Below are positions 180-39,615 of a stretch of DNA of 64,000 nt, one piece after another. The stretch covers positions 13,206,001 to 13,270,000 of the forward strand of contig OZ281494.1 in the NCBI GenBank assembly GCA_965637545.1. Direction: 5' to 3'. The DNA is from Phallusia mammillata (taxonomy: Eukaryota). Each line of letters begins with the position of its first letter. Position 1 is the stretch's first letter. The notes beneath the pieces were generated by a model. The model did no database searches. It worked only from the letters and a program-made list of their open reading frames with translations, and was not told the DNA's origin. A program made the position numbers and the translations under genes.

Positions 180-3100
180 GTCTAATGAAACAAGGTCGTT
201 ACGGGTCGAACCTAACAAAGCGCCATAAAGTTCCTAACAAACGAACCTGAAAATTATCAATCAAGCGTGTGAAATGAAAGAAATCGATATAACTTATAAG
301 ATTACTGTAGTAACGCCCAAACAACACAGTAATTTAGCTATATTTTAATTTAATCATCGGTCTTTCCTGTTTTTATGCGATCAACCATACGACCATGAGA
401 CACTGTACGAAGTATAATAAATGTCACTGTTAGGAAAGTTTATACCCAGGGCCTGCAAGCTTATCTGTGTTATTACAATCATTTTTTTAGTGTAGCCTAT
501 GGACAACTTAACAGTATGTGGAGAGCAGACTGCAAGAAAAAATGCTAGTTGTAAAGTGTTTCTTGCAACATTGATAGTGCAGGGCAAAAACTCGTGCCTA
601 TCATCAGAGAACCTTCAAACATGCGCTGTGGGATGTCTTTCTCTTTTTTAAACATGTCCAGGATATTCTGCTCATGCGCTTCCGTTACGCTTTTGTGCTG
701 TCCCGCACACATTTTTGGGCTTCTGGGAGAAAGCGAAAAAAACGCTCGTCAACACTGGATTTTAAATTTTTCTTTTGGCGCAGAAAACTATAGTTTATTG
801 TGCACACACAAGACGCAAAACTTAATATTCTTTAGTGGGGGTGGAGCTACAGGAAATTTCGATTATATATAGATAACAAAAGGGCAAAGCATTTTATGTC
901 TGTTTTCCATTTGCTTGTGTCATAAACGCGCAAACCTTGAGATCCATCTACAAGTTGCGAATGAATTACTTTATGCAATGTTTTTTGGTTATTGAGGTAT
1001 TTTAAATTGAGTCAAGGTTTTGGATAGGGGTGCTTAGGCTTTTAAGTTAAACTAAGTTTTACAGCGTTGTCAAACTGGTGTTTACTGTGTTGACCTGTTT
1101 TGTAAACCGCAAGTGATCGTAAACAATGAACCGGCATGCAAAAAGAACAGTCTGTTCATTTTCTCCAGGTTTGTAATCTTACTAAACACAGTTATCTTGA
1201 GCATTTGATCATAAAATTAGTCAATGTATGTGCATTGTATTTTTGCAATGTTTTCACATTTATGCACAGGAACACGGTTTGGTAAACACCCTACCAGCCA
1301 GCAAAGCTTGCGACAGATCACTTCCTTAAAATATATTTTTGCCATGCTACCTCATGCAGGAGGCCTTAAAAACATCGTGCTCGAATCTTTGACGTCAATT
1401 ACCGCAACAAATGCCACGAAGCGTTTTATGTAACAAAACGTAAACAAATGATTGGATTGTGTGTAGCCACTTTCAGGACTGCTTGGAAAAGAGAGTTTAG
1501 TGCCTTAAAAGCGAGTGTTTCATATGTTTAGTGCAAAGGGATTTCGAAAAAAGCTGTATTTTGCAAATGCCAGACTAAACTTGTTATGTGCATCTTTTTG
1601 AGCTTATCTTTGTTTAAAATACGAACGTATTGTTTAAAATACAAACGTATTGAATGCAACTGTTCAGTATTTGGTGACGTAGCAATTCGCATGTTCTCGG
1701 TACTGCCTCGCTGTACTTTGCTTTGAGCTATTATTTAATTAAATGAACTAACGAAATGAGGTCAACATTATTCAATGACTTTACAATTGGGAATAAGTTT
1801 CACCAATCGAACTTTGACCTTGAGCACAACCATATACGATAACATTGTCGTCATCTTTAACGTCAATGCACCAGTCAACGCAGAACCTCGAGGTAATAAA
1901 CTCAATTGCCCTGATCCCAAACATTATGCATACTTTGCACTTTTATTCTTAAACCAGAGCGAGAGAGTTCAAAGAGCTGTAGATGCGTGAAGTGTGGTTT
2001 TATCGATTGTGTATTTCATTGGACGAAAGTATGCGTAATAAAAAGTTAAATTACTTGTAGCAAACAATCCAGAAGATAAGCAATCATATTATTGTTTGTT
2101 AGTCTTGATTAAACCTTTTAATCGCATCAGTTTCATGCCGACTTCACCACAATGCCTCGCTGAAGTTAATCGATAACGCGATCGTTATCTTGGGGTGAAA
2201 GAAAAACGCATTTTTTCTTCTGAACTAGCTGTATATAAAACAGTCGCATACAGAGCGTTCATTTACCGGTGCTAAGTTTAATGCCAGGAAACCTAATATG
2301 TTTGGTGAGCAACGTGAGAGCCGTGCGACAGCCAAGTCATTAGTCAAACAGAATTCGACACGGCGCATGATTGCACACGTTTTTTGCAAAAAAGGTTGCT
2401 GAACGCCCCTATATGAGTCGTTAACAGTGCTTTGGAGTTTGTTTGCAGCAGCAAGTACTTGGGTAGTGTTGTACAATTGCCGGGTATTGGTTTATTGCTG
2501 CGAGGTGCATTCTGATTGTTGATATACTTTCTTGTTTTAGTGGGTGTGTAACTGTTGAGAAAGTTGAGAAACCTGCTGCGAGGAACAAATATTGCCCTGT
2601 TGACGGCGGCTCAGACTAGCCCACTTCCTATCGTGTCGTACTGGCGTCCGTTTATGGTATTGCTACAGTTTTCTGGAAGTAGGTTAATCCTCTGAGAGCT
2701 TGTGTGGTAAAAGGGTCAGTTAAGTTGAGTTTACTTTGCTTGTTAAAAGAAAACATCGCGACACCACAGTGCTAAGACAATCACCAAGCTGGTAATAGAG
2801 GCGCAATGTTGAAACGGTAAGGGACGCAAAGCATTGTAGGTCACGGTTGGTGGATCATGACTGAACGCTCTGCAGCTACACCACCAAAAAGCATCGAAAG
2901 TATAATAGTAGAACTGGATCTGAAAAGTGTATTAAAAAGGGACTCTTAACTGCAGCTGTGAAAATACTTTTGTTGCAGTTGTAGATAGCGACAGTCTTTT
3001 ATTGTGTCAGTCGCTATTGTATAGTGTTGCTACCAGCAGTCTTTGAGCCTGTGGTTTTTTAGTATGTTGTAAGCGAGCTGTGTGAAAGCGTTTTGCACAA

Positions 3101-3242
3101 TTTTCCCAGACTGTTTTCGTCCAACAAGGCAACGCGGTTTTCACGTTATTCAAACAAAAGCTTTTTTTCCCACGCGATCTTTGTATTTGACATTTTCCCT
3201 TTGGTGTTTACCAGACTTGTTGACGCCCTTTAAAAGGTTGGG

Positions 3243-3492
3243 CCGAACGTCTTTCTAAATCACGAGGTCGCGATTGTGCAAGGTTCGCGGTTTTGGTACA
3301 AAATGGTCGTTTTGTGATTTACGGTGTGGTCGTTCGGTGATTATGACCATGGACCACGTAGCTAACAGCTAACACAGAACCATTGTTCGACCGAACGGCC
3401 TTCTAAACCACGAAACCCAAATAGTGCAAGGTTTACGGTTTGACGGAAAGTGTCGTGATTTATATCTTACAGGCTTCTTGTCGATAATGAAT
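3243..3492 (+). repeat. Imperfect direct repeat (about 100 bp units, period 148 bp) upstream of the first paralog
   Basis: ccgaacgtctttctaaatcacga...gtgcaaggttcgcggttt...gtgattt (from 3243) versus ccgaacggccttctaaaccacga...gtgcaaggtttacggttt...gtgattt (from 3391). Confidence 0.55.
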
Positions 3493-3706
3493 GAGTTTTA
3501 TTATCTTGCCGCCCATGCGCTATGCGCTATAAAACCGTGTTGGACAAGGTTTAAATACAGCTACTATTTTATTCGAATGTGTTAAATCGAGTGTTTGAGG
3601 CGACTATGCCACTTCACTGAATGCTCGTTACTTTATTACATGTTTGTTTGATTTCAGGGTCAAGTTGAAAAGTATTAGGTGATTTGAAGCTATTGTTGTT
3701 GTTATT

Positions 3707-6700
3707 ATGGATATACACCAGCACAGATCACCGGCAATCGGCACAAACCCGATTCAAGCCTCGTTCTCGAACCACCAAACCTGCACTTTCTCAAGTGATT
3801 TCCAGAAAGCCAACTTTGCTAACCACCTAGAACTGTCTGTTCCTCCAAGCCAAGAAAATGCTAGAATTTCACAAACTGTTCGACAGCGACCGAGGAACCA
3901 GCAGGGTCAAATGCAAGCTGGAATGGCCAACAGTCACATGCAACCGACCTGCAATATTAACCAGAAAGTGATTCAGTACAACTTGCAGGTTAATAAAGTT
4001 TCCGCCATCCATGCACCAAATAACCAACCAACAACTTCCCGACATGGTTTATTTTCGAACACTTCAAGTACCCAGTACGGTGACCAACAGTTTTATGCAA
4101 ACCAGCAAGTGAATATGGTAAGTAACGAGCAACCACCCAGTACGCTAGGCACGGCTGATATTGAAATAGTCATAAATCAACTAACTGTAACACAGGGTTC
4201 AAATAACCGTTTTAACAACTTACAACAACATCAAAGAGCTGCACAACCGACCAATAACCAGTTTGTCAACATGCGAAACTCGAACAATCTGCATTTCACC
4301 AACCAGAGCCAAAACAACCAGCACCAGACAAACCATGGACCACCTCGTCAACACAGAACAATTGCAAGCTCCCATACTCCCGTAAGTTATTTCCAGTCCC
4401 AACCTCAAAACAACGCTAGAATGCCAATCAATCCCCAAAACAACCAGCAAGGTCAGGTTTCGCAATGGAATGAACATCAAGGATACAGCCGACAACACTC
4501 TCAAAGCAACCAGCTACTTCAAAACAATCCTGCAAACGTGAATTATTTACCTACCAGTGGTGGGGTTAGTTTACCACAACGCCATGTGATGAGCATGCAA
4601 GCCAACTACCAAACGAATGTACAGCAAAACTACACTCGACCAGTACGTCAGCAACTGCGAACTCATTTGACTCAACACCAGAATGTGAACGCAGAAATTC
4701 AAAAAGCCGGGCGGACTTTTTCCAACATTAAAACACCACCGCAGAATGTCAATCTTTTTTCAAACCCGAACCTACATACCAACCAGAGTCGACAAGCAGC
4801 CAATCAAACCTGTACAAAAGAAGACAAACAATCGTACAAACATTTAAGAGGTCAAAAGATAAAATCACCTGAACTCCGGCCGTTCGTGGATCTCAATAAA
4901 ATCACAAATGGTGAAAATATGGGACTTGCAAAAGATGATTCAACTGTGAGAGTCCCTATTTTATCACAACTTCTTCGCCAAATTAATCACGACGCCATGC
5001 AAAAAGGACCCAATGTACCTCTGAAGCCATTTGTTCCCAATCATGGATGTACGCCAAATAGTAACCAAGACAAGGTAAAAGAAGTTCAAAGTAACCAACC
5101 AACAACTGAAAGTTCTTCGGGAATACCTGGGTCCCAGGCGACGTACATTCCCCGCTTGCCCAAAACACCACGAGCATCTAAAATTATTCCACAACGTCGT
5201 CCTTCAAATAAGTTAGCAACACTTGAGTTGGCAAAAGAACATCAAATGAAACCTCAACAAGCACCAAGCGAGACCAACGCTCTCTTAACTCCAGGGCAAA
5301 TACAGGCTTTTGATCAATTGTTATATGGATCCAACAATACCCAACCCCGCCAGACTGGTTCGAACTCTCACATGTTACCTAATGGACAACACCAGTCACT
5401 AATAGCAACCAACCACTCCTTATCTGAGACTCATCAGCCCTCCGCAAGTTCCTGCAGGTCTCTCTTTGAACCTGATCCATCACCTACCAGATCGATACAT
5501 CACCAGTCACAAAATATAACCGACCACTCCCATACCGAAGCCCACCAGTCCACTGAAAGATCCTGGATGTCGATATTTGAACCTGACCTGTCACCAAGTG
5601 GACATCAGTCTTCCTTCGGGTCCAGTGACTCTTTGTTTGATGGATTGCCCTCTGGTCACGATCTTGGCCGTTCTGCTTCAGCCGATTGTCACTTGCCTCA
5701 GAAACATGGGTATAACTTTATTCGACCCCAGTCAGCCCCAAACGCCGACCCAATAACACCAATTACAAAACCACATCTTAAACCACCGACCTTGTCCAGT
5801 TTACCAACTGCTGACCAAACTTGTCCTGTGGCTGAACATGAGGATAGAAAATCGGTTCTGTTGTCTCGAATTCCAAAACTTTCACCACGATCAACATCTC
5901 CAGAAAACCAAAAAAATAGTGAAAATGCCAAAAGTTTGCAAGTGCCAAGTCTGATCAAAGTCGAGAAAAGTCCAGAAACAACAGGTGCTGAGGAAGATCC
6001 ACCGCTGATCAAAGTCGAGGAAAATCCAGAAACACCAGATGCTGAGGAAGATCCACCACTAATTGCAATCTCTGAAATATTTTCCTCCTACAAAAAGACG
6101 AAATCAGATGATGATGTGATATTTATTAAGGATTCCCCTCCAGCCAAGTCTAAGTCAGACGAGAAAATTATCAAACAAAAACCGCTGTCAGCTCGAAAGA
6201 TAAAAATGGAGCACCATGAAGTTATAGACTTGACATCCGATGACGAACACAGGCAAGATCACGAAACTAAAAGTGAGTCCCCTTCCAAAGCTGCTAAGAT
6301 CGTTTCTAAACCTTCAATGAAATCGCCTACAGCGGAAGAAGACCGCCTGAGGCTAATTCAGGATGATGTTGAAATTCTTCTTCAAATGGGAATCCCAAAA
6401 TATCGCCATCGCTCTATTAGGAATAAACGCCATAGAACAGATAACATGAACAGTTCGGAAGACGAGATTTCTGGGAAGAAAAGAAGATGTCACCAAACTA
6501 GGAAAAGTTCCAGTGAAGATCCTGTTATTCCAGATGCTCCACTGCCTTCTGAAATGAAAGAAGTCATTCCCGAATTGCCACAAAACATCCCTGGAAACTC
6601 CACGGAAACGAGTGCAGAGAACTCGCAACTAAAAAAACGAAGCAGACTGGCTATTCCAAAATCAAAACCTCCAAGAATGGACTTGGTTTATACTTATCAC

Positions 6701-6859
6701 CTTAAACGTTTACGTAGAAATGATGTTGGTGTCACTTCGTATTCTCCTCAATTTCTTGCAAAAAATGCGTCGATTCTTAAACGTACCAAGCGTTGCAAAG
6801 TTGTTCTTTCCGATATTTTCTCCATTAAGTCGTGCATTGATAAAGTAACGAAGTCGTGA
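3707..6859 (+). CDS. Single-exon 1050-aa Q/N-rich disordered protein, paralog 1 of a local unnamed family
   Basis: Uninterrupted 3.15 kb ORF in AT-rich DNA with an acceptor-like tttgatttcag at 3647-3657. Shared motifs: KSPELRPFVDL, DDVIFIKDSPP, EVIDLTSDDE, DDVEILLQMG, PRMDLVYTYHLKRL, CKVVLSDIF. Confidence 0.85.
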   Translation: MDIHQHRSPAIGTNPIQASFSNHQTCTFSSDFQKANFANHLELSVPPSQENARISQTVRQRPRNQQGQMQAGMANSHMQPTCNINQKVIQYNLQVNKVSAIHAPNNQPTTSRHGLFSNTSSTQYGDQQFYANQQVNMVSNEQPPSTLGTADIEIVINQLTVTQGSNNRFNNLQQHQRAAQPTNNQFVNMRNSNNLHFTNQSQNNQHQTNHGPPRQHRTIASSHTPVSYFQSQPQNNARMPINPQNNQQGQVSQWNEHQGYSRQHSQSNQLLQNNPANVNYLPTSGGVSLPQRHVMSMQANYQTNVQQNYTRPVRQQLRTHLTQHQNVNAEIQKAGRTFSNIKTPPQNVNLFSNPNLHTNQSRQAANQTCTKEDKQSYKHLRGQKIKSPELRPFVDLNKITNGENMGLAKDDSTVRVPILSQLLRQINHDAMQKGPNVPLKPFVPNHGCTPNSNQDKVKEVQSNQPTTESSSGIPGSQATYIPRLPKTPRASKIIPQRRPSNKLATLELAKEHQMKPQQAPSETNALLTPGQIQAFDQLLYGSNNTQPRQTGSNSHMLPNGQHQSLIATNHSLSETHQPSASSCRSLFEPDPSPTRSIHHQSQNITDHSHTEAHQSTERSWMSIFEPDLSPSGHQSSFGSSDSLFDGLPSGHDLGRSASADCHLPQKHGYNFIRPQSAPNADPITPITKPHLKPPTLSSLPTADQTCPVAEHEDRKSVLLSRIPKLSPRSTSPENQKNSENAKSLQVPSLIKVEKSPETTGAEEDPPLIKVEENPETPDAEEDPPLIAISEIFSSYKKTKSDDDVIFIKDSPPAKSKSDEKIIKQKPLSARKIKMEHHEVIDLTSDDEHRQDHETKSESPSKAAKIVSKPSMKSPTAEEDRLRLIQDDVEILLQMGIPKYRHRSIRNKRHRTDNMNSSEDEISGKKRRCHQTRKSSSEDPVIPDAPLPSEMKEVIPELPQNIPGNSTETSAENSQLKKRSRLAIPKSKPPRMDLVYTYHLKRLRRNDVGVTSYSPQFLAKNASILKRTKRCKVVLSDIFSIKSCIDKVTKS

Positions 6860-8722
6860 TAAGCCATTTTTTCTACTGCCATCGCCATAAATACATTCCA
6901 TATTCGTTTTATGTATTGTGCATACAAAATTTTAGTTATGACAGGTCAATTCTTTTATTGGTTAAGACAGGTCAAGTAATTCTGCAATCACCGTCAGTGG
7001 GATAAGACAGAAGTGCAGAATCAGTTTCACATGTATTTTACACCATTTGCTCTAAACATGGCAAACAAACATGGAATCCCAAAGTTAGAACTTGGGCTAG
7101 ATACCCCAGCTATGTGGTTAAATGATTGTACACACCAAACGATAGGTCATGTTTTGCTAGTCGGCAAAGATTCGGGGTCACTAAATAGCATTCCTGGTCA
7201 GATTAACAACCTCTTGCATAATTATCGGGTGCAATTGATATGTGATTACCAAAAAAACCACTGCTGGTGCACATACGTTTGTTATAAGCCTATAATAATA
7301 ATTTGCCCCGCAACAAACGCAATATTTTGTCAATATCTTTTTCGCCACCGATGTCTTGCACAGGGGAGTGCAACGAACATTATATATTGTATTTTTTCAC
7401 ATTCTGGAGTACGCTCACACGGACACCTCATTTGTTGAATCAAAAAATCCCCCAAAAAACTTTGTATGTAGTGTCAAAAACACAAAGAGTGCTGTAAGAA
7501 ACTTCTAGAAACTATAGTTATCAAACAAATCTTTTTAGAGACCTTGGCCACGGGTAAATTTTCAACAGGCTTTTAGAAGGCACAATTCGCTCAAAGAAAT
7601 CACATGACGCCAAAGAAGCAGTTTTATGCAACAAGACACCAACGGCAAAGTGAAGAAGAAACCTGGACACACACGAATAATCGCCAACCGTGCGAACAAT
7701 AAAAAAACGATTTTAACCCGAATTAGAATACATAAGCTAAATGTTCCTGCTGAAAGCGTTTATGTTTGGTTAAAAAGGAAGGAAGTCTTGTGTTACGTCA
7801 TCTCGTTCGTGCCCTTCGTAAACACGCTGTTTTATGTGGACCAGAAACAACCTTATACGAATGGTCATTGTAGCGACCTATATCCTGTTTAATTACTTGA
7901 TTAGAGTGTGAGCTAATTAACACTGACAAAACTAAGATATTCTATGCATTAAACAACAGGTCGCTAGTGAGTTCTATTTTACCGCTGTGAAAAGTCTCTA
8001 GTCAGGACTTCACAGTACGTTGACCCACTTTAATTGTTAGCTGCTTGTTGGTAGCATTTCTGTTTTCTGTAACTTTGTTACCAAATGTTTTTTTGGCCAT
8101 CAACCTGTGCCAACTTGCTATGTTAATGTCGACCACCCACAGCGATGTTGGCGCCAGGAGTAGGTAAACCTCGCTATTTACAACCATATAAGAGAAAAAG
8201 GCGACGTTTGCTTCTGATGTTGACCCAGTTCAAACAAAAACATGGTAAGAATTGGTTCCAGGTCCGGAAGTATCTCTGATGGTTGTAGTAGTGTGGTGGA
8301 TTGGGGATGGATTACTTATTCAACATTTTAGTTGCTAGTACCTACAATGCGACCAGGCCTTTTTCCCCTGCGTGTTCTCGTCCTACTGTTTAGGACCTAA
8401 ACAAACAGACATTGCAGATGTTGATTGTTTTGTCTATTGATTCTAATTAAACCTCATAAACAGCAATAGAATAGAATGCACTGCGTACAGGGGCTCGAGA
8501 ATTCTAGGTTTAAAAAGTAAGAATGCAACTTGTGTAGGTCCCACTAAATATTCAGTTATTTCAAGTCTCGCTTGCCAACGACTAACGCATGAGGCACAGA
8601 ATACTGAAAAGCTATTTTATAAGCCAGTGCTTCCCAAAGTGTGGGCCATGGCCCAGTACTAGGCCACCAAGACATTTTCAATGGGCCACAGAGCATTTGA
8701 ACAGATTCTACTGTTTTGTTAT
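5877..8722 (+). repeat. Left arm of a large inverted duplication (3' third of paralog 1 plus about 1.9 kb of 3' flank)
   Basis: The reverse complement matches 17811-25298 once the insertions are removed. Examples: 8521-8700 versus 17830-18010, and 5877-5965 versus 25225-25298. Confidence 0.9.
8381..8402. other. Putative hAT excision footprint
   Basis: tccta-ct-gtttagg-a-cctaaac lies at the position where the duplicate arm has tcctaaac[MITE]tcctaaac. It is an inverted copy of the TSD centred on the complement of the flanking base. Confidence 0.7.
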
Positions 8723-9110
8723 ACTGTAGATATTATGCGTTTTGTTTTGAAAAACATAATATTTGCAAAACAACAATTATTTAGCAAGAAAGGTCATTGA
8801 CTTCTAACACTGATTTTTAACTGCTGGGTGGGAGCAGTTCAAAGTGGGTGAGTAGTCCAGCATGTGAGTAGCGGGAATTGAGAAGTATCCATTTATTGAA
8901 CTAGCTTACTTTTCAAAAAAACACTTAGTAAGTAATCTATGGTTTAACCGTTACTTGTCCTTTGCTTTGATCAGTGGTTCTAAAACGGTGCAACAAAACA
9001 TACCAAAAAGTGGTTATATGACATGGAATTAATTACCATATTTTTCCATGTTACCATAACTGGTGCGTGCTCAATACTTTGTGTGTTTCACAGGTGGATC
9101 CCGGGGTAAA
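8625..9110. mobile_element. hAT MITE remnant with truncated right terminus
   Basis: Starts cagtgcttcccaaagtgtgggcc. Ends ...ggtggatcccggggtaaaaaagtt without the final gggaaccactg. The first ~100 bp are also present in the duplicate arm (17811-17908). Confidence 0.5.
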
Positions 9111-9507
9111 AAAGTTAGCTTATATCAGGGGTTCCCAAACTTTTTTGGCTGCGGCCCAAATGTTTATTTCATAACGATTCCTGACTCACCACGTGTTGTA
9201 AATTTTTGTGCTGTAATTTTTTAAGTTCCATGATCATTTTGAGAAGTAAATCCAAACTATATGTATCTTTCAATATACTTCCTTTTAGCCATATTCGCAG
9301 CTATTATTTAGTAAATTTCACTAAATGTTTTTTGAAAAGTAAGCTAGTTCAATAAATGGCTACTTCTCAATTCCCGCTACTCACATGCTTGACTACTCAC
9401 CCACTTTAAACTGCTCCCACCCAGCAGTTGAAAACCAGTGTTAGGAGACAATGACCTTTCTTGCTAAATAATTATTGTTTTGCAAATATTATGTTTTTCA
9501 AAACAAA
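8741..9507. repeat. Local fold-back: about 190 bp inverted repeat (8741-8930 / 9318-9507)
   Basis: tttgttttgaaaaacataatatttgca...ctgctgggtgggagcag... versus ...ctgctcccacccagcag...tgcaaatattatgtttttcaaaacaaa. Confidence 0.85.
9126..9310. mobile_element. 5' part of another CAG-terminated hAT MITE
   Basis: caggggttcccaaacttttttggctgcggccc start; no matching right end found. Confidence 0.4.
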
Positions 9508-20188: not shown

Positions 20189-20907
20189 TAGGGCAAATAT
20201 TTTTTGACTTGTCAAAAAAAGTCAAAATTTTGTCAAAATTTTTAGAATAGGTCAAAAATTGTCAAAATTGTTTACAAAGTCAAAATTTTTTACAAAGTTA
20301 AAATTGTTTACAAACTGCATTGTCGTGGTGTTGTAGAGGTTGCACTGCCAGCAAACTATTCGTTTTACACCTTGTAGCCTACTTTATACTGTTGTAATTG
20401 GCCCATTGCCCCAATTATTGCGAATCATAAACCATCAAGTGAGTGAAACAATTAGGTTGATATGGCGTGATGCTCAACACACCTCAAAACGTGCAAAATT
20501 TTGGTAGGTCCCAATTCATTTTACGGTAGCTGCAGGTTAGGTGCAGCTCTTGCTTCGGTTTTGCTTTAGATACTTCATGTATCTTTCGTTTATACAAATG
20601 TATTGAATAATTTTCGTTGTGTCTTAGCTGCAGTTTTTTGGCAGTGATTTTTAATCAGCTCATTCCCTTTTCAGAATAGGTTAGGTCTATGTTCAGATTT
20701 TTGCCCTTCTCTTAGACTTTTGCACATTCTTTCGCTCTAGTTAGATTAGCCTACAGCCATATTTTAACTTTTCGTACAATAATGCGTCATTTAACCACTT
20801 GAATTCTTCATAGGTCAAAATTTTGTCAAAAAAAGTTTTTTAAAGTCAAAATTTTCAATTTGTGGGTCAAAATTTGTCGTTTTTTAGGTCAAAAAATAAT
20901 CGCCCTA
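20189..20907. mobile_element. Non-autonomous hAT element (Ac-type TSD)
   Basis: TIR tagggcaaatattttttgac / gtcaaaaaataatcgcccta; TSD gtgataag (nTnnnnAn); many gtcaaaattt subterminal repeats. There is a possible frameshifted transposase relic LRCVEHH..INLIV on the minus strand near 20450-20495. Confidence 0.85.
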
Positions 20908-21578
20908 GTGATAAGTATAAACCAATTCCATTCTTGGAGGTTTTGATTTTGGAATAGTCAGTCTGCTTCGTTTTTTTAATTTGCGAGTTCTCTACACTCG
21001 TTTCCTTGGGGTTTCCAGGGATGTTCTTTGGGGATTCGGGATTGACTTCTTTCTTTTCAGAATGCAGTGGAGCATCTGAAATAACAGGATCTTCACTGGA
21101 ACAGGACGAAATCATTTTCCTAATTTGGTGACGTCTTCTTTTCTTCCAAGAAATCTCGTCTTCCGAAATGTTCATGTCATCTATTCTATGGCGTTTATTT
21201 CTAAATGAGCGATGGCGATAATTTGGGATTCCCATTAGAAGAAGAGTTTCAACATCATCTTGAATTAGCCTCATGCGGTATTCTTCCGCTGTAGGCGATT
21301 TCTTTGAATGTTCAGAAACGATCTTAGCAGCCTTGGAAGGGGAGTCACTTTTAGTTTGATGATCTTGCTTGTGTTCGTCATCGGATGTCAAGTCAATAAC
21401 TTCATGGTGCTCCATTTTTATCTTTCGGACTTACAGCAGTTTTTGTTTGATAATTTTCTCATCTGACTGAGACTTGGTGCCACAAATTAACTTGTTTAGT
21501 GCTTTGAAACCTAGACATCTTATGACGTAACAATGCTTCTGATAGTTTCAATCATCACGCCTTGTGTTTGAACTAGAG

Positions 21579-29256: not shown

Positions 29257-31578
29257 ATGAATGATAACCAGAAGCCAATATTGCACCGAAAAGGCATATC
29301 ACTCGGAAGTTGTGTAAAAGGAAAAACACCTTTGTTACAAAATCAAAAACGTGTTTGTGCATCTGCTCCAAGTACAGTACAACAACAAACGAGTACCACA
29401 AAAAATCTAAGCCCACCTCCTTCGTACGAATCGTCAGTGGGTACGAATAATCCGGTTCTTAATTTATCCAACAAGGCATCTCAAATGAGTTTCAGCAAAC
29501 AAGTTTTTCAGTGCAATATTAATATAAACGCTCTTCCCTATATGGATGTTTCGGCACCAGGTACTACGCAAACTAACAGCAACCGGGCAACTGTGCACCA
29601 TAGCGGCAACCAACACGACAACAACAGGATTATTGCACCAGGCAGCCAAGTGTTGAATTCATGGCATGGGCTGACGTATGACAGCAACGGAAAATTGATC
29701 CATCCGAGTTTACTACCTCAGCGAACGGGCTATGTTAGCTCTTTCACTTCCCGGCCGAGACATAATATCCCGCCGACCTCAAAACCCAGTACTGTTGTAA
29801 ACCAAAGTATACCTTCGTTTGACCAGACTTACTTCTACCACCCATCATCGATGGCCAATCAGACAAACTCTGTTAGTTTGGTAAGAAATCTCAATTCCAC
29901 ATCAGTCCCACTGACACCTAATTTCAACAACTTGCAAGTTTGTCCTTATCAGCCGAGGCGATCCAATGCATGTTCAAACAATCCACAATCGAGTAGTGGC
30001 CCGAAACAAAGTGCACCTCGCCAGGCTCAGGCTCCTGTATGTAGCACACCAACTCCTGTAACGATGGTACAACTGCGCCGACTCGATACAACGAGTGTCC
30101 TTGCACAATCTAACAGATACAATCATCAAACTGCGACAGTTTCGACCACCGGGCAACGGATTAACACGAAAAACTGTAGGGTGCAGTATGTTGCTGCAGT
30201 GGATGTTCAAACCAGTTCGCAATCAAAGCAATCAACCATTCCACAGGCACCACACCATGATGACCAATCTCAACTAGTGCTATATTCGAAACAGACGCAG
30301 TTGCAACATCGACCGCTACAAATTCAACGAAATATTCGAGTTCGACAACCTCAAATAAATCGTGCGGGGCAGCAACATCGCACGCCACTAATTTCGGAAC
30401 AGCAAAAATGTCCAACGTTCTACCCACAGGATCAACCAAAGTTTAAACCACCACAAAGGGTTCCTGCAGAAAACCCGGCAAAGTCTCACGACTGCAATAA
30501 TTCTGGATTACAAAACAGTGAATCACCTCAAAGTCGAGATTCTTCACCAACATTGTCTCTAGAACAAAACCTAGATGATGTAACTGCAGAACGAGGCAGA
30601 CGAAAAGGTAAGCTCCCTCTTGTAACATTTGTCGAGTCAAAATCGATTGGCGACGCGGAAAAAAGTTCAACAGCGTCCGAGTCTCCGTCGGTACTTAGTG
30701 AAGATTCAAGTCAAAGCGATTTGCAAGTGCTGTCTGTTTACTCTGTGCAGAATCAAGACTCTTCAAGCAAAAATAAAATGCAAGAAACAAAGGAGCAGAG
30801 TGCTTTAAAGTCAGCCGTTGACAAGTTTGCGAACAATTTACCCACGAACATTACAAAAGAACAAATTGACACCATCGTTGAAAAACTTCAGACAAGCAAT
30901 TATAGTTGCAAAACAGTGGAAACGATAATAGAGATGTTGCAAAGCCATCAGACAAGGAAAAGAACCGTTTCGATGACAAGTGCACAAGATGTCAGTCCGT
31001 CTTCAAAAGCAAACAAACTTTTAACTCCGTCCAAATGGCGAGCGAAAACGAGATTGACAAATAAAGTTGCGAGAGAGGAAAACAATGAAGATGTGAAAAA
31101 TGTACAAAAAGCTGCTAAGGAACTTTTGAACTTGGGGATGCCTACCAGTGAAAATTACAAGGTGGCATTTGAAAGAATGAAAAGGAGAAGAAAGGCGACT
31201 GAGAATAAAGATCAGAGAATTCCACTCGTGCACAACATTAAAGAAGAACCAGTAGATTTTCCAATTGAAAACAATGAACTTACTGACGAAGATGCAGTAA
31301 TTGTGTCAAGATTTAGTACAAAGCGGAAGGCAAGAATTACATGCGGATTACCTCACAAACAACTGCGCTTTGATCATGTGTACAAAAGTCATCTTAAACG
31401 GTTACATGAGGTGCAAGAAATTTCTCCACATTTGCTCACTCAGCTTCAAAATTCGGACAGATTTCAGGTAAAATTAGAGCGCGTTCCCTCGGACATATTG
31501 TGTAAAAAGAGTTCTGTAAATATAGTTGATATTTTTGATCGACGTCAAACCGCCGAGCTTGTAACATGTAAAAAATGA
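29257..31578 (+). CDS. Single-exon 773-aa Q/S/T-rich disordered protein, paralog 2
   Basis: Uninterrupted ORF preceded by ttttgcag (~29231-29238). Motifs: KLPLVTF, KELLNLGMP, IKEEP, LRFDHVYKSHLKRL, FQVKLERV, VNIVDIF. Confidence 0.8.
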   Translation: MNDNQKPILHRKGISLGSCVKGKTPLLQNQKRVCASAPSTVQQQTSTTKNLSPPPSYESSVGTNNPVLNLSNKASQMSFSKQVFQCNININALPYMDVSAPGTTQTNSNRATVHHSGNQHDNNRIIAPGSQVLNSWHGLTYDSNGKLIHPSLLPQRTGYVSSFTSRPRHNIPPTSKPSTVVNQSIPSFDQTYFYHPSSMANQTNSVSLVRNLNSTSVPLTPNFNNLQVCPYQPRRSNACSNNPQSSSGPKQSAPRQAQAPVCSTPTPVTMVQLRRLDTTSVLAQSNRYNHQTATVSTTGQRINTKNCRVQYVAAVDVQTSSQSKQSTIPQAPHHDDQSQLVLYSKQTQLQHRPLQIQRNIRVRQPQINRAGQQHRTPLISEQQKCPTFYPQDQPKFKPPQRVPAENPAKSHDCNNSGLQNSESPQSRDSSPTLSLEQNLDDVTAERGRRKGKLPLVTFVESKSIGDAEKSSTASESPSVLSEDSSQSDLQVLSVYSVQNQDSSSKNKMQETKEQSALKSAVDKFANNLPTNITKEQIDTIVEKLQTSNYSCKTVETIIEMLQSHQTRKRTVSMTSAQDVSPSSKANKLLTPSKWRAKTRLTNKVAREENNEDVKNVQKAAKELLNLGMPTSENYKVAFERMKRRRKATENKDQRIPLVHNIKEEPVDFPIENNELTDEDAVIVSRFSTKRKARITCGLPHKQLRFDHVYKSHLKRLHEVQEISPHLLTQLQNSDRFQVKLERVPSDILCKKSSVNIVDIFDRRQTAELVTCKK

Positions 31579-32630: not shown

Positions 32631-35279
32631 TCAATGAAGAACAACAGGTTTGTTAAGTTTATCTTTAAAATCGTTAGTATTTTTACGAGCGTTTGCAAGA
32701 TGATAACTGTAAACCAAATCCATCCTCGGTGATTTTGCTCTGGCCATTGTCAATCTAGCTTGAGCTTTCGATCGTTTTCGGTTCACTGACGGGGTTTTAT
32801 GACCCAATTTGTCTTGAAGTGATTGCAATTCGTAATTGTTCAAACATAAGTCTGAGGTAGCCTTTATCTTTTCTTGGTGTTGCGAAAAATCTTGGGGGAG
32901 AATGTCTTTATCGGAACAGGGTAAAATCCTTTTCTCATCGTATGCGCAACGTCCGTTTTTTACTCGGATCAAATCTTCATCAGTTGCCGAAACCCTCATG
33001 CTCTTCTCCCGACGTTTTCTCTTGGAACTGGTTTCACCGTGGTAATTTACAGCTCCCATTCGAAGAAGAGCTTCAACTTCCTCATGGATGTTCAATAGAC
33101 GATCTTTATCACTGACAAATGATTTCCTTGAACATCTCTCAATCGTGTTGCCCTCAGGGTAACAAGAAGCAGGTCCTTGGTGTTGATCATTATTTATGTT
33201 TTCATCTTTGGATGTCAAATCGACAAAGTGAAGTTTCTCCTTTTTTATCTTTCTTCTTAACGGTAAGGATCTAAGCTTCGTCACTGCTTGAAGAGGGCTG
33301 TTCGAAGGAGGTGAATCCTCGATACATAACACGCCGGGAACTTCTTCTGGCAAATCATTGTTATCACTATGTAAAGTTTGAGAAGTAGCGACGAAGGGCA
33401 ATTTTTCGTCCACATTTTGTGTTTCCAACTTCGTTTTAACGTTGACAACTTTGTCAGGACTTTGAACTGGTTGAAGATTTTCTAAAGGTGATTTGACTTC
33501 TTTGGTGGATATTTGTTGTTCGGTAAATGATTGTGCCAGTGAAAATATCCTATTGTGGGTATCTGTTGTCATTTCTTCTGGGCAGTCTGACTGGGACGGC
33601 AATAATGGGATAATGGGGTTAACTGGTGTGACTGGAACACTAGGACCTGTAGTTGAAACAATGTTGTTTTCAGGTTGTTCGGAATTGCGATTGTCGGGTG
33701 AAGAAAACGGCGAAGGTGGTGGACAATGAGATGCATGTAACTCCTTTTTCTGGATTCTAACGGTGACAGATGTGGTCCAAAGGGGATAAACAACGCATTC
33801 GTGTTGTTGTTCGTGGCGTTTCGACGACTGGTCATCAGTTGACACGTCGGGTTCCTGCTGTGATTCTTGCTTTTCTGTTGTCTGGGTTAGTCTTGAAGGT
33901 GACACGTGAGACCAAAAGGTCGAATCAGTAGGAGTCAGCTTTGACTCTTGCATATTTAGTGACTGATTGGGGTCCAAATGTGACAGGTGAGATCCAGAGT
34001 TGCACACATCGGGCTCCATTTGTAACTTGGGGTTTTCAGGTGATTGGGTGGGACCCAGCGGTGACAGTGCAGCAGTTCCAGTGGTTGGTTCAAGGGACCT
34101 TTTATTTAATCCATGTATTTTCTCGGGTGACAAGTATGGCCGTGAAGGTGACTGATGGGATCCAGTAGTTGGTTCGCTGTATGCTTGCTTTGGCTCGAGT
34201 TGAAACTGGAATGTCTGGCTTGGAGTATAATTTGTTGCAGTCGATTGCGTCAAGGGTACGGCTTGATATTCATGGCCGGATTGAAAGTGCATGGATGGCT
34301 TTTGCAGACGTGACGTGTTGGGTCCATCGACAGTTGTCATATAAAGATTATTTGGTTGTGGGGTATTTTGCGGATTCGGGGATACGTAGGGTACCTGGTT
34401 ATGGCCTTTACTGGAACCACATGCAAAATGCCCAAACAGCTTTAGTTGATGACTCCCTTCATAGCTGTTGCTGTCCGATTGTTTCTCTTTTATCTCGTGT
34501 ATGATTTGTCCAAAACGGTTGGTCTCTTGTTCATCAGAGTCAGTGTTGACAATTGGGCTTTTATTGCTTTGGTTTTTCACTTTGCTAAAGTCAACAAACG
34601 GTCGAAGCTGAGGTGACTTTCGTCCAAGGTCAGCGTTTGTCTCATGTTTTAGCAACAACTGTGAATCACCCCTTGTTTTATGTGATATTGTTTGATTGAC
34701 TGCTGCTTTATGGCAAACTGACATATCGTCGCCAGAGTTGGGAAACGGAATGGTGTTCTGCTTTTGGGAATGTAAGTTGGCAAGCATTTGTTGCAATGAT
34801 GCAAGTCTTGCTACCTCCTGAACTAGACCCAAATTGTTTTGATTGCCTTTGTATTTCTGTAAAGGAACTGCTTGTTTTTGTTTGTTGTTTACTTGACGAT
34901 TGGCCTGCTTCTTTGCCTTCATCTGTAAAGAATCTGGTTGTTTTTGTTGGATCTTTGTTTGACCATTTATCTGTACATTTGCTGGTATTTTTGAAGGAAC
35001 TGATTGATTTTGTTTGGCATTTTCTTGACCAATGACCTGCATATATGCCGACATCTGTAAAGGAACTGATTGGTTTCGTTCGGTGTTTGCTTGGCCATTG
35101 ACCTGCAAATTTGCTTGCATTGCTTGTATGTGACTGATCCCACTTTGTCCCCATTTTTTGTTTGGCACAATTCTAGTAGTTTGGTTGTAGCTATTCGAAG
35201 AAATTCCGATGCGTTGATGTTGGCCATGTAAAGAATCATCCTGGTCATTGGCACGACTATTTTGGTTCGTCCGAAGCAT
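32631..35279 (-). CDS. Single-exon 882-aa Q/N-rich disordered protein, paralog 3
   Basis: Uninterrupted ORF with motifs KSPQLRPFVDF, GVLCIEDSPP, HFVDLTSKDE, EEVEALLRMG, PRMDLVYSYHL. These are collinear with paralog 1. Confidence 0.85.
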   Translation of the reverse strand: MLRTNQNSRANDQDDSLHGQHQRIGISSNSYNQTTRIVPNKKWGQSGISHIQAMQANLQVNGQANTERNQSVPLQMSAYMQVIGQENAKQNQSVPSKIPANVQINGQTKIQQKQPDSLQMKAKKQANRQVNNKQKQAVPLQKYKGNQNNLGLVQEVARLASLQQMLANLHSQKQNTIPFPNSGDDMSVCHKAAVNQTISHKTRGDSQLLLKHETNADLGRKSPQLRPFVDFSKVKNQSNKSPIVNTDSDEQETNRFGQIIHEIKEKQSDSNSYEGSHQLKLFGHFACGSSKGHNQVPYVSPNPQNTPQPNNLYMTTVDGPNTSRLQKPSMHFQSGHEYQAVPLTQSTATNYTPSQTFQFQLEPKQAYSEPTTGSHQSPSRPYLSPEKIHGLNKRSLEPTTGTAALSPLGPTQSPENPKLQMEPDVCNSGSHLSHLDPNQSLNMQESKLTPTDSTFWSHVSPSRLTQTTEKQESQQEPDVSTDDQSSKRHEQQHECVVYPLWTTSVTVRIQKKELHASHCPPPSPFSSPDNRNSEQPENNIVSTTGPSVPVTPVNPIIPLLPSQSDCPEEMTTDTHNRIFSLAQSFTEQQISTKEVKSPLENLQPVQSPDKVVNVKTKLETQNVDEKLPFVATSQTLHSDNNDLPEEVPGVLCIEDSPPSNSPLQAVTKLRSLPLRRKIKKEKLHFVDLTSKDENINNDQHQGPASCYPEGNTIERCSRKSFVSDKDRLLNIHEEVEALLRMGAVNYHGETSSKRKRREKSMRVSATDEDLIRVKNGRCAYDEKRILPCSDKDILPQDFSQHQEKIKATSDLCLNNYELQSLQDKLGHKTPSVNRKRSKAQARLTMARAKSPRMDLVYSYHLANARKNTNDFKDKLNKPVVLH
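34857..35120 (-). repeat. Four degenerate 66-bp (22-aa) tandem repeats in paralog 3
   Basis: MQANLQVNGQANTERNQSVPLQ / MSAYMQVIGQENAKQNQSVPSK / IPANVQINGQTKIQQKQPDSLQ / MKAKKQANRQVNNKQKQAVPLQ. Confidence 0.8.
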
Positions 35280-36654: not shown

Positions 36655-38307
36655 CGAGAAAGAGGAACTAATCACGTTTCTGCCTTAGGTCGCTTTGTCT
36701 AAGCTTGCGGTAAATTGTTAAACCAAACTTATTTACAGCCGCACTGGTTTCAAGCCGTGTATCTTAATTCTTTTGGCAAAGCTGCTTTCCATTTCAAATA
36801 CTTTTTCGTTTGGTTTCTGTGTAAAAAACGCTCAAAACATGGTTTCCACTTGTGTATGACAAAATCCGTTTGAAATGCGAATCTTTACAGCTCTTTACAC
36901 TCTCCTATTCCGGATGCTTTAACAACGTTCACGTTTTTTCGTTACAAGTGCTATTTTGTTCTTGACTGATTACACGAACCTCACATGCTATGTTTGTATT
37001 TCTTCAGTCGCTTGAAGTACAGACAGAAGAAAAAACACAATCGAGAGAAAATTTGCGTTTTTCTTTTGCTATCGGCTGGAAACCATTTAAGCGTATCCAT
37101 TGAAGTTGGAAAAAAGAGTCCTTGCTATCGATAAAATTATACGTCCAACTCATTTGTATTTCTAATCCAAAACCGCAGATAAATTAATCGCATTTAAGGA
37201 GAAAGACATTATAAATCATTATCATGGCTGATAATTTGTTATCGTGGCACTGGTTTTGATAAATATAGCTCAATAAATAGAACGCTAAGTGCAATGGTGG
37301 TCCGAAAAATCACCTTTCGTGCCCTTTATTGACACGCAGGTGACTTTCAATAATCCATACAGGCGAGACCTGACCCTCCCACACCGGAAACCAACGCCGT
37401 GCCCGCAGCTTTATGAATAACCGCCCTCATTGTAGCTGGTTTAACTCCTAAGTATGCCTGTCTATCTAAGATTATTTTCGAAGCCTTTAGGCACATCTAC
37501 ATAATTCCGTTGAAGCATAACAAATATTGTGGAGGCCCTGGCAAAAACACTAAGCAAATATGGACGGTACTCAGAAAACGTCCAGACTGTAACAGCGTTG
37601 ACAAACTGGACGGATTTGTACGTAAGCTTTCACACACACCAAAGTGAAACGGTGAGGGTTTAATCCTCAACACAGGCAAACAGGGAAGGGAGCATATCTC
37701 ACAGACATTTTGTTGTAACTCATCAGGCATTGGTACAATTAATAAAATATTTACATGAAATCTAAAGCTTACAAACTTCAATGGTACTTACAGTCCTACA
37801 TAGAGTGAGTATGCCCGAAGACATCTACGTTTTGCGGTTCCACTTTAAACCAAGTAATCACTAAAACACCATTTGATTACGGAATTCATCCGGAGGCTTA
37901 CTTCGGTTAAAGCAATTAACGTGTCTCGCAGCAATTACCTAAAATGCGCATTTTTCGTGCTGAAACTGGCCTGGGTTGATTTTATTTGTGTAAATAGAAT
38001 CAAGTCAGGGTAAAAGCACCACATGGTCTGAGTTGTATAGTTAGAATAGCGCGATTGTGGCCAAGGTAACAGTTGCGTGGATTTCATTGAGATACGTTTT
38101 TAAATCAGAAATGTAGAAACAACAGCTTGAATGTTTTGACGATTTCAGTGTTAATACTCAGACGTAGGTAGAAACAACATATTTGCCAGAAGAAAGCTGT
38201 TGAGTTTCTGCCTGGAAGCAAAAGTTTATACATGCTGCAACAACGTTTTTTTTTCTTTTAGGCCAATTATACTTACGAAGTGATTGGGTTATTTAAGTAC
38301 ATACAAA

Positions 38308-39615
38308 ATGTTTTCTGGTGGCAAAAATACTCAGCAATGTTCCAATACACCTTTCGTTTATTCACCCGACTGCGAAACTTTTCATGGCATAATCAGGAAC
38401 TCCAACAGGCACCAAGTTCCACATGTGAAGTCTGGCAGTTTGTTGAACGCTGATCAGTTACATAACAACATCCATGACAACATTACAACTATGCAACATA
38501 CTGTGCATCCAAGAGCTCTGCAAAACGACAAGGGTTGCTACAATCTACAAACTTGCCATTACAATCTAAACACCATGTACTGCGGGAAGCAGAGTTATGA
38601 CAGTTATCAACGTTACGAAAGGTTTCTTCGGCCAACATATGCAAACTACCAACAGCGCTTGGTCACACCATTCTATCCAGTCTATCAATATGGGCAACCT
38701 TTTAGGTTTCGTATTCAGCTTCCAACCCAGGTAAACAGATCATGGCAGCCAACAACAAGTTTTAACCATGGTGCGCCATATAAGCCAAATGTGTTGCCAA
38801 AGACAAAACACAAAGTTGAAGACATCGGAATAGTCTCATGTCAGTCTCTTGAAGATCACTATTACGTGGCAGGTGCGGGTGTTGAGGATAAGGTTGTCAG
38901 CCCACAGCCCTTCGTCAAGTTAAGAAAAAGTTTAAATCAATCTACAAAAGAGTTTGATGACAGAACGAACACCGTTGATGACATAAAAATAGTTTCCTAT
39001 CAGTCTCTTGCACATATTAATAACGACGTGTCTAACAAAAGGAAGTACAGAAACATAAAACCAAAAATGTACTCGCACTTTACGAACGCTGCATTGAAGA
39101 TTGGATACAAGCCAACCGTAGATTTACCCCGAACATCCGTTGATCACTCTTTTACTGGTACAAAATGCACAAAGACTTTCAAGGGTAAGCCCACTTGCCG
39201 CGACAAAATTACAGTTACCAAAAAACGGAAACCTGCATCTTCTGAATTGAAAGCCGAAATTTTGTCCAAGAATTTTTCAAAGCAGCAACAAGAAGCATCA
39301 ATTTGCAGTTTAAATTTTTCTACATCGCATCAAATGATTCAGCCCTCTATCAAAATTTCGGGCCACACAGAAAGAGCCAAGACAGTTGAAAAGAAGCGCA
39401 AAAATGTCCGAATGAAAATTGGAAAGACGTTTAAGTACCCCCGGCCTGATCGACTGTATAACCTAAACCTGCGGAATTTGCGCAAGACCGAGATAAAGCC
39501 ATCCTACCAACCGCTAAAGTTTAGACTTAAATCGTGTAAAGTTGTGTTGGAAAAAACTATTACGATTTTCAGTCTTCATCAAATTCGTGTTAAATTAGTT
39601 GACATTTTTCGGTGA
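38308..39615 (+). CDS. Single-exon ~435-aa protein, paralog 4 (shortest and most divergent)
   Basis: First ATG at 38308 (the ORF track opens at TTG 38284), after a ttttcttttag acceptor. Motifs: SPQPFVKL, DDIKIVSYQSL, PRPDRLYNLNLRNL, CKVVLEK, IRVKLVDIF. Confidence 0.75.
   Translation: MFSGGKNTQQCSNTPFVYSPDCETFHGIIRNSNRHQVPHVKSGSLLNADQLHNNIHDNITTMQHTVHPRALQNDKGCYNLQTCHYNLNTMYCGKQSYDSYQRYERFLRPTYANYQQRLVTPFYPVYQYGQPFRFRIQLPTQVNRSWQPTTSFNHGAPYKPNVLPKTKHKVEDIGIVSCQSLEDHYYVAGAGVEDKVVSPQPFVKLRKSLNQSTKEFDDRTNTVDDIKIVSYQSLAHINNDVSNKRKYRNIKPKMYSHFTNAALKIGYKPTVDLPRTSVDHSFTGTKCTKTFKGKPTCRDKITVTKKRKPASSELKAEILSKNFSKQQQEASICSLNFSTSHQMIQPSIKISGHTERAKTVEKKRKNVRMKIGKTFKYPRPDRLYNLNLRNLRKTEIKPSYQPLKFRLKSCKVVLEKTITIFSLHQIRVKLVDIFR

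What the first reader, a model, noticed from the sequence alone, without database searches (positions are those of the whole stretch)
4865..4897. Positionally conserved PxVx[L/F] motif in all four paralogs
Paralog 1 SPELRPFVDL (PFVDL at 4880-4894), paralog 3 SPQLRPFVDF (34587-34601), paralog 4 SPQPFVKL (38908-38922), paralog 2 KLPLVTF (30616-30630). It is an island of conservation at the end of otherwise unalignable low-complexity regions, and paralogs 1 and 4 match the canonical HP1 chromoshadow ligand exactly. The nearby SP could act as a CDK phospho-switch (inference).
Basis: partly seen in the sequence, partly recalled or inferred. Interest (0 to 1): 0.75.

Follow-up and report, generated by a model that had tools for sequence, protein, structure and literature searches.

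The report
Conserved PxVxL-like motif in sea-squirt orphan proteins
A 13-residue peptide motif kept by selection in four disordered, sea-squirt-specific sister proteins looks like a docking site for the heterochromatin protein HP1, but binding is untested and only one or two of the four copies fit the stricter rules for such sites.

Summary
All four peptides lie at the stated coordinates: p1 PFVDL, p3 PFVDF on the minus strand, p4 PFVKL and p2 PLVTF. P[FL]Vx[LF] is expected about 0.03 times per protein by shuffling. Flanks scored without the motif link p1 to p3, p1 to p4 and p4 to p2, although a global alignment places them differently. Between p1 and p3, six of ten conserved residues use different synonymous codons, so this is purifying selection and not gene conversion.

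The host is an ascidian. The p1 mRNA carries the Ciona-type spliced leader, is essentially intronless and is present in cDNA-like runs. The genome has one detected HP1 gene, with an intact chromoshadow domain.

The HP1 reading is plausible but unproven.
- p1 and p4 match P.V.[LM], and p1, p3 and p4 have Lys at +4.
- p3 and p2 have a bulky Phe at +2, and p1 and p3 have Asp at +1.
- Only p4 meets the expanded Drosophila HP1a rules.
- The one outside homologue found (P0017, distant) lacks the motif.
- The complex prediction gave no answer.
- The nearby SP is a minimal site, not a full CDK site.

This is an ordinary kind of feature in an undescribed protein family, of modest interest. I looked up no notes on other DNA.

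The parts
4862..4900 (+). p1 motif block KSPELRPFVDLNK (aa386-398). The core is P392 (-2), V394 (0) and L396 (+2), with R at -3, D at +1 and K at +4.
   Evidence: It lies inside one uninterrupted cDNA-like contig covering 4195-6894.
34581..34619 (-). p3 motif block KSPQLRPFVDFSK (aa221-233), with Phe at +2, Asp at +1 and Lys at +4.
38899..38928 (+). p4 motif block SPQPFVKLRK (aa206-215). This is the only copy that meets the expanded HP1a-binding rules: K at +1, R at +3, K at +4 and no acidic residue.
30598..30636 (+). p2 motif block RRKGKLPLVTFVE (aa448-460). It has Phe at +2, Glu at +4 and no Ser-Pro. It is the weakest copy.
3707..6859 (+). p1 coding sequence of 1050 aa. The protein is predicted to be largely disordered and rich in Q and N at the N-terminus.
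3655..3656 (+). AG trans-splice acceptor. The mature p1 mRNA starts at 3657 behind the ascidian spliced leader. The outron or primary transcript starts near 2265.
   Evidence: Loose ends in cDNA run X2, genomic tttcag|G and the published leader sequence (PMC1488885).
4117..4194 (+). Optional in-frame 78-nt GT..AG intron (26 codons). Both retained and spliced forms are present in the four runs laid. It lies upstream of the motif.
6221..6247 (+). Acidic SUMO-interaction-type motif VIDLTSDDE in p1. p3 has FVDLTSKDE at the aligned place.
   Evidence: sequence reading; function inferred
6335..6388 (+). The only confidently predicted helix in the C-terminal third (EEDRLRLIQDDVEILLQM, pLDDT about 80). 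It is conserved in p3 and in the outside homologue P0017.
6644..6718 (+). C-terminal box R..(6)..K.PR.D.VY..HL..LR. It is shared by all four paralogues and by P0017, and it defines the family.
29257..31578 (+). p2 open reading frame, 773 aa.
32631..35279 (-). p3 open reading frame, 882 aa.
38284..39615 (+). p4 open reading frame. The first ATG is at 38308, giving 435 aa.
20867..21415 (-). Decayed inverted partial copy of the 3' third of p1. It is 69% identical in protein, has a broken C-box, and does not include the motif region.

Best explanation
The stretch encodes a short linear docking motif. Its form is SP[EQ](LR)-P-F-V-[DK]-[LF]-x-K in p1, p3 and p4, and a degenerate K-L-P-L-V-T-F in p2. 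It sits in the disordered middle of four tandemly clustered proteins that are expressed, largely intronless and restricted to ascidians and close kin. Purifying selection holds the motif while the surrounding sequence drifts.

The most likely receptor is the dimer of the HP1 chromoshadow domain. In that model the peptide lies as a beta-strand across the dimer seam. Pro(-2), Val(0) and Leu/Phe(+2) fill the hydrophobic groove, and Arg(-3) and Lys(+4) meet the acidic C-terminal tail of HP1. This would tie the proteins, with their SUMO-type motifs further downstream, to H3K9-methylated chromatin. The paralogues would differ in affinity: p4 strongest, p1 next, p3 and p2 weak or lost.

Shown here: the motif, its constraint, the transcription of p1, and the presence of an intact HP1 receptor. 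Inferred: the binding, its strength, and any phospho-regulation through the Ser-Pro.
For: - The motif occurs once per paralogue against 0.02-0.04 expected.
- Flank homology without the motif links the sites.
- Six of ten residues conserved between p1 and p3 differ at synonymous sites.
- p1 and p4 match P.V.[LM].
- Lys is at +4 in p1, p3 and p4, a hydrophobic residue is at +5 in p1 and p3, and the net charge of the +/-8 window is +1 to +4. These fit the basic-flank rules of PMC12526061.
- The context is disordered. Disorder-promoting residues make up 61-68%. AF2 finds no fold, and the local pLDDT maximum of 64 falls on the motif block.
- One HP1 gene was detected. Its chromoshadow exons are about 92% identical to Ciona CBX1-like, and that Ciona domain matches solved CBX1/3/5 chromoshadow domains at E about 1e-33.
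- Acidic SIM-type motifs and psi-K-x-E sites lie downstream in the same proteins.
Against: - No binding evidence of any kind exists. The complex prediction gave no answer.
- The expanded HP1a rules are met only by p4.
- p1 and p3 have Asp at +1 and only 2 basic residues between -4 and +4.
- p3 and p2 have Phe at +2.
- p2 has Glu at +4.
- Those rules come from Drosophila and may not transfer to ascidians.
- The single outside homologue, P0017/L016, has no P.V.[LF]. It has only degenerate IPVSL repeats, SPKPLLIPD and TPLFKLL.
- The pentamer is common in proteomes.
Confidence: 0.4

Rival explanations
1. It is a selected docking motif, but for a different receptor that also takes a short beta-strand. 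Candidates are calcineurin (PxIxIT-type), SUMO (the FVDL core resembles VIDL/IVDL SIM cores), or a partner not yet described.
For: - The same constraint evidence applies.
- PFVDLN, PFVDFS and PFVKLR fit the relaxed PxIxIT pattern as I recall it: P, not P/G, I/V/L/F, not P/G, I/V/L/F, then a polar residue. This is from my own knowledge and was not checked in a paper here (one search did not find it).
- The tetrapeptide FVDL recurs in the acidic SIM of p3, FVDLTSKDE.
- Phe at +2 and Asp at +1 are poor for HP1 yet conserved between p1 and p3. This hints that the receptor tolerates or prefers them.
Against: - The strict calcineurin pattern has Ile, not Val, at the centre (own knowledge).
- SIMs are flanked by acidic or phospho-serine residues. 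These flanks are basic, with net charge +1 to +4.
- Nothing else in the proteins points to calcineurin.
- The nuclear-type features (basic clusters, SIMs, psi-K-x-E) fit chromatin better.
Confidence: 0.3
2. It is a relic of common descent without a specific function. A slowly decaying patch in duplicated genes happens to resemble PxVxL.
For: - The motif degenerates across the family: L to F at +2, F to L at -1 in p2, the SP lost in p2, and Glu at +4 in p2.
- It is absent from the only outside homologue.
- The flank z-scores are modest.
- The PFV enrichment (6 against 0.32 expected) loses significance once the three homologous sites are counted as one event.
Against: - Synonymous sites between p1 and p3 have diverged at 6 of 10 conserved residues, while the amino acids are kept.
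- The rest of the N-terminal two thirds is barely alignable among paralogues that share under 25-35% identity even in their best regions.
- Pro and Val are two of only five invariant columns in the motif-centred alignment.
Confidence: 0.18
3. It is a structural element within the protein. For example, it could be a beta-strand that pairs with the hydrophobic strands 20-35 residues downstream (p1 VRVPILS, p4 DIKIVSYQS, p2 DLQVLSVYS), or it could mediate self-association.
For: A hydrophobic patch recurs 18-35 residues downstream of the motif in all four paralogues. The motif block shows the local pLDDT maximum.
Against: AF2 on the four-sequence alignment predicts no strand pairing and no fold (mean pLDDT 52). 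The downstream patch is predicted to be a low-confidence helix in p1.
Confidence: 0.08

Closest known systems
HP1-box / PxVxL ligands of the chromoshadow dimer. Examples are CAF-1 p150, KAP1/TIF1beta and Sgo1 (solved complexes such as 1s4z and 3q6s appear among the PDB hits). Also the Drosophila 'HP1a access codes' of PMC12526061.
   Same: - The Pro-x-Val-x-Leu core in p1 and p4.
- A disordered context.
- Basic residues at -3 and +4.
- A hydrophobic residue at +5 in p1 and p3.
- Conservation above that of the flanks.
   Different: - Asp at +1 in p1 and p3.
- Phe at +2 in p3 and p2.
- Fewer than 3 basic residues between -4 and +4, except in p4.
- The host proteins are orphans with no recognised chromatin domain.
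- No binding data.
SENP7-type or CAF-1-type proteins that combine HP1-binding motifs with SUMO-related modules (own knowledge, not checked here).
   Same: One long disordered polypeptide carries a PxVxL-like site together with SIM-like and psi-K-x-E sites.
   Different: There is no protease or other catalytic domain and no sequence homology (Pfam, PDB and atlas searches were blank). The family is confined to ascidian-like genomes.
PIAS/RNF4-type SUMO-interacting motifs (VIDLT, IVDLT).
   Same: The hydrophobic core FVDL has the same psi-psi-x-psi shape. Genuine-looking SIMs of that type occur later in p1 and p3.
   Different: The flanks are basic, not acidic or serine-rich. A Pro precedes the core, and p4 has Lys in the x position.
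Calcineurin PxIxIT docking motif.
   Same: It is a six-residue beta-strand motif beginning with Pro and alternating hydrophobic residues. p1, p3 and p4 fit a relaxed version.
   Different: The central residue is Val rather than Ile. No LxVP partner motif or other calcineurin context was recognised.

Membership tests
HP1 chromoshadow ligand (PxVxL; ELM LIG_HP1_1) | Core pentamer P-x-V-x-[LM]. | tested here: met
   p1 PFVDL and p4 PFVKL match. p3 PFVDF and p2 PLVTF do not. The pattern is taken from PMC1989135.
HP1 chromoshadow ligand (expanded HP1a rules, PMC12526061) | A small aliphatic residue (Leu/Val/Ile, rarely Gly/Met) at +2. | tested here: inconclusive
   Met in p1 and p4 (Leu). Not met in p3 and p2 (Phe).
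HP1 chromoshadow ligand (expanded HP1a rules, PMC12526061) | [quoted passage not shown] | tested here: met
   Lys in p1, p3 and p4. Glu in p2.
HP1 chromoshadow ligand (expanded HP1a rules, PMC12526061) | 3-6 basic residues between -4 and +4, and no acidic residue at -6, -3, -1, +1 or +5. | tested here: not met
   p1 has 2 basic residues and Asp at +1, and so does p3. p2 has 1 basic residue. Only p4 passes, with 3 basic and no acidic residues. The rule was derived in Drosophila, so its transfer to ascidians is uncertain.
HP1 chromoshadow ligand | It lies in an intrinsically disordered, accessible region. | tested here: met
   Composition is 61-68% disorder-promoting residues. AF2 finds no fold around the motif, with mean pLDDT 52. 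This is weak evidence because the alignment is shallow.
HP1 chromoshadow ligand | Conserved among homologues beyond the flanking sequence. | tested here: inconclusive
   Conserved among the four paralogues, with synonymous divergence. Absent from the one distant outside homologue. No close orthologues could be reached.
HP1 chromoshadow ligand | The receptor is present: an HP1 with an intact chromoshadow dimer interface and the C-terminal ...ERLTWH segment. | tested here: met
   One locus at G000:C3:22707972-22709059, PF01393 at 52.8 bits. The Ciona homologue matches solved CBX chromoshadow domains at E about 1e-33.
HP1 chromoshadow ligand | Physical binding to the chromoshadow dimer that is abolished by mutating the central Val. 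| not testable with these tools
   This needs a bench assay. The one complex prediction gave no answer and counts neither way.
SUMO-interacting motif | A hydrophobic core psi-psi-x-psi next to an acidic or phospho-serine stretch. | tested here: not met
   The core FVDL/FVDF/FVKL is present, but the flanks are net basic at +1 to +4.
Calcineurin PxIxIT docking site | P-x-I-x-I-T-like hexamer. The strict form has Ile at position 3. | tested here: inconclusive
   The strict form is not met because Val is at position 3. The relaxed form, recalled from memory, is met by p1, p3 and p4. I could not verify the pattern text in a held paper.
CDK phospho-site | [ST]-P-x-[KR]. | tested here: not met
   SPEL (p1), SPQL (p3) and SPQP (p4) give only a minimal Ser-Pro, and p2 has none. 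Full sites occur elsewhere in p1, p3 and p2.

The most novel reading that the evidence does not exclude
The four genes are an ascidian-restricted, fast-evolving tandem family of fully disordered HP1/SUMO adaptors. They would be comparable in spirit to the rapidly evolving heterochromatin partners of Drosophila HP1a. Duplication would have produced a graded series of HP1 affinities: K against D at +1, and L against F at +2. The conserved Ser-Pro just upstream would provide a phospho-switch. Different paralogues would be deployed in different tissues or stages.
Probability: 0.2. Interest if true: 0.55.

Novelty: new member of a known kind. Interest (0 to 1): 0.3.

Why it matters
If the motif does bind HP1, it gives a handle on an unannotated protein family in a model chordate relative. 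Testing is easy there because mRNA injection and live imaging in Phallusia embryos are routine. It would also be a natural series of HP1-box variants for asking how flanking charge and the +2 residue tune affinity outside flies and mammals. If it does not bind HP1, the motif is still a selected docking site in an orphan family, and its partner would be worth finding. In either case this is one more candidate short linear motif, not a new principle.

Tried and rejected
- **Complex prediction.** I folded two copies of the Ciona HP1 chromoshadow domain (P0002 107-184, about 92% identical to this genome's exons) with p1 aa376-410. The result was ipSAE 0.02, 'no answer'. It is neither support nor evidence against.
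- **Family and homologue searches, all blank.**
  - Pfam on all four proteins.
  - Word search with p1 aa760-1050 and with the p1 motif piece.
  - ESM Atlas with p4.
  - Profile of the C-terminal region against PDB sequences.
  - Two JGI metagenome scans.
- **P0018 (E 4e-4).** This is an ORF through a tandem repeat on an unrelated metagenome contig, and I judged it spurious.
- **PFV tripeptide as the real motif.** It occurs 6 times against 0.32 expected. Three of these sites are homologous, and the extra copies are not conserved at aligned places, so I did not pursue it.
- **Alternative p2 sites.** LPYMDV at aa94 and IPLVHN at aa656 have no flank support.
- **Gene conversion as the cause of p1/p3 identity.** Rejected because of the synonymous differences.
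- **Literature.** I found no paper on ascidian HP1 partners. The Ki-67 preprint that mentions Phallusia and HP1 is unrelated.

Full report
**What is at the coordinates.** Window 4865-4897 (+) translates to SPELRPFVDLN. It lies in a 1050-codon open frame at 3707-6859.
- RPFVDF is on the minus strand at 34587-34601, in an 882-aa frame.
- SPQPFVKL is at 38899-38922, in a 443-aa frame.
- KLPLVTF is at 30610-30630, in a 773-aa frame.

The motif prolines are p1 aa392, p3 aa227, p4 aa209 and p2 aa454.

**The genes and the organism.** A profile of the shared C-terminal region finds only these four genes in the 240-Mb genome, plus one decayed partial copy of the p1 3' end. All lie in this cluster.

Contigs from four public runs cover p1 from 3657 to about 6900.
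- One run carries the template-switch oligo followed by ATTCTATTTGAATA, joined at the genomic acceptor tttcag|G.
- That sequence is the published Ciona spliced leader (PMC1488885).
- So p1 is a real, trans-spliced mRNA of an ascidian.
- It has a single optional in-frame 78-nt intron (4117-4194), well upstream of the motif.

Earlier notes of this scan name the species as Phallusia mammillata. My own support is the spliced leader and the fact that the best named HP1 hit is from Ciona intestinalis.

RNA-like runs also hold 35-65% of the words of 29700-39615. That region is about 59% coding for p2, p3 and p4. This is compatible with their expression, but I could not lay reads on them.

**Nature of the proteins.** There is no Pfam domain, no PDB relative and no Atlas lead. 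Disorder-promoting residues make up 61-68%. AF2 gives no fold for the C-terminal third or for the motif module.
- One confident helix is predicted (EEDRLRLIQDDVEILLQM, pLDDT about 80).
- Weaker helices are predicted over the C-terminal box.
- In the module model, the local confidence maximum (64) falls on the motif block.

These proteins are therefore disordered scaffolds that carry short motifs:
- the motif in question;
- psi-K-x-E sites;
- acidic SIM-type sites (VIDLTSDDE in p1, FVDLTSKDE in p3);
- basic clusters;
- a family-defining C-terminal box, K.PR.D.VY..HL..LR.

**Is the motif more than chance, and is it positionally conserved?**
- P[FL]Vx[LF] occurs once in each paralogue against 0.02-0.04 expected from shuffles.
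- A global alignment pairs only p1 with p3 and puts the p2 and p4 motifs elsewhere. That alignment is unreliable in such sequence.
- I therefore scored the flanks with the motif removed against every other window of the partner protein.
  - The p1/p3 upstream flanks rank 1 of 194 and 5 of 161.
  - The p4 downstream flank is the best match in p1 (1 of 180) and in p2 (1 of 126; reverse 1 of 60).
  - BLASTP independently aligns p1 384-446 with p4 203-265, and p1 298-404 with p3 125-239.
- Of three possible p2 sites, only aa454 has flank support.
- The scores are modest (z 2-3). I regard p1, p3 and p4 as homologous sites sharing SP[EQ]..PFV, and p2 as probably homologous.
- In KSPxLRPFVD..K, six of the ten residues conserved between p1 and p3 use different synonymous codons. 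The identity is therefore kept by selection on the peptide, not by recent gene conversion.

**Does it look like an HP1 ligand?** The receptor exists. One chromoshadow locus was detected in the genome (PF01393 at 52.8 bits). Its exons encode a canonical domain ending ...FYEERLTWH plus an acidic tail. It is about 92% identical to the Ciona protein P0002, which matches solved CBX1/3/5 chromoshadow domains at E about 1e-33.

By the classical pattern P.V.[LM] (PMC1989135), p1 and p4 match and p3 and p2 do not. A 2025 study of Drosophila HP1a partners (PMC12526061) makes three relevant points.
- The pentamer is insufficient on its own. [quoted passage not shown]
- The working signature is:
  - a hydrophobic residue at -2;
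  - Val or Ile at 0;
  - a small aliphatic residue at +2;
  - 3-6 basic residues from -4 to +4;
  - no acidic residue at -6, -3, -1, +1 or +5.
- Such sites sit in disordered, conserved stretches.

Scored against these rules:

| Paralogue | Result |
|---|---|
| p4 | Passes everything (K at +1, R at +3, K at +4). |
| p1 | Has R at -3, K at +4 and I at +5, but Asp at +1 and only two basic residues. |
| p3 | Same as p1 (with V at +5), and also has Phe at +2. |
| p2 | Fails: Phe at +2, Glu at +4, one basic residue. |

All four windows are net basic (+1 to +4). That argues against a SUMO-binding reading of the FVDL core. It fits the acidic HP1 tail.

**Outside the genome.** An exhaustive profile search of 1.84 billion representatives found one true relative, P0017 (E 1.2e-6).
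- It lies on a 17.9-kb metagenome contig.
- Its gene reads as two exons (7681-9321 and 9551-10960) joined by a GT..AG intron.
- Its best matches back in this genome are p4 and p3.
- It shares the helix and the C-terminal box. Its N-terminal half is not alignable.
- It has no P.V.[LF]. It has only IPVSL twice, in 29-residue repeats, plus SPKPLLIPD and TPLFKLL.

However, the relative is so distant that turnover of a short motif would be expected. Closer orthologues could not be reached.

**The Ser-Pro.** A Ser-Pro lies 3-8 residues upstream in p1, p3 and p4. The chance of this per protein is 0.03-0.10, so it is part of the conserved block. None of the three is a full [ST]Px[KR] site, and p2 has none. 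A phospho-switch is conceivable, because acidic charge next to the core is disfavoured in the fly rules. It remains pure inference.

**Verdict.** The odds add to 0.96; the rest I leave open.

| Reading | Odds |
|---|---|
| HP1 chromoshadow docking | 0.40 |
| Another beta-strand receptor | 0.30 |
| Relic of descent with no function | 0.18 |
| Internal structural element | 0.08 |

HP1 docking is the best single candidate receptor for p4 and p1. It is doubtful for p3 and p2. The one computational binding test gave no answer. The feature is an ordinary kind of thing, a candidate HP1 box, in an undescribed orphan family.

Noticed in passing
window 2265-3657: A cDNA contig with a template-switch oligo begins at 2265 and runs unbroken into p1. 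A second 5' end at 3657 carries the spliced leader. So about 1.4 kb upstream of p1 looks like an outron of the primary transcript, at lower depth than the mature mRNA.
   Followed up: partly
window 4117-4194: There is an optional in-frame 78-nt GT..AG intron in the Q/N-rich N-terminus of p1. Spliced and retained forms co-occur in all four runs laid, giving 1024- and 1050-aa isoforms.
   Followed up: partly
L016:7681-10960: The only outside homologue sits on an ENA metagenome contig of unknown host. It has a 229-nt intron where the window's genes have none. It also has three 29-residue repeats, each with an [IM]PVS[LS]P core, in the place where the window's proteins have the PFV motif region.
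   Followed up: partly
window 29700-39615 compared with 3600-6900: Runs of one study (coded P8) hold about 40% of the words of the p2-p4 region, but other runs of that study hold none of p1. This hints that the paralogues are expressed in different samples or stages.
   Followed up: no
window 6644-6718 and the aligned places in p2, p3, p4 and P0017: The C-terminal box K.PR.D.VY..HL..LR, followed by ..V.L.DIF, is the best conserved part of the family and the only part that reaches another organism. Its partner is unknown. It is arginine/tyrosine-rich and weakly helical in the model.
   Followed up: partly
window 20867-21415 (-): An inverted partial copy of the p1 3' third is 69% identical in protein. 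It has stops and a scrambled C-terminal box, so it is a pseudogene fragment.
   Followed up: partly
G000:C3:22707972-22709059 (L008): Only one chromoshadow-domain locus was detected in the whole genome. The Trp codon at the end of its third exon is split by a phase-2 intron.
   Followed up: partly
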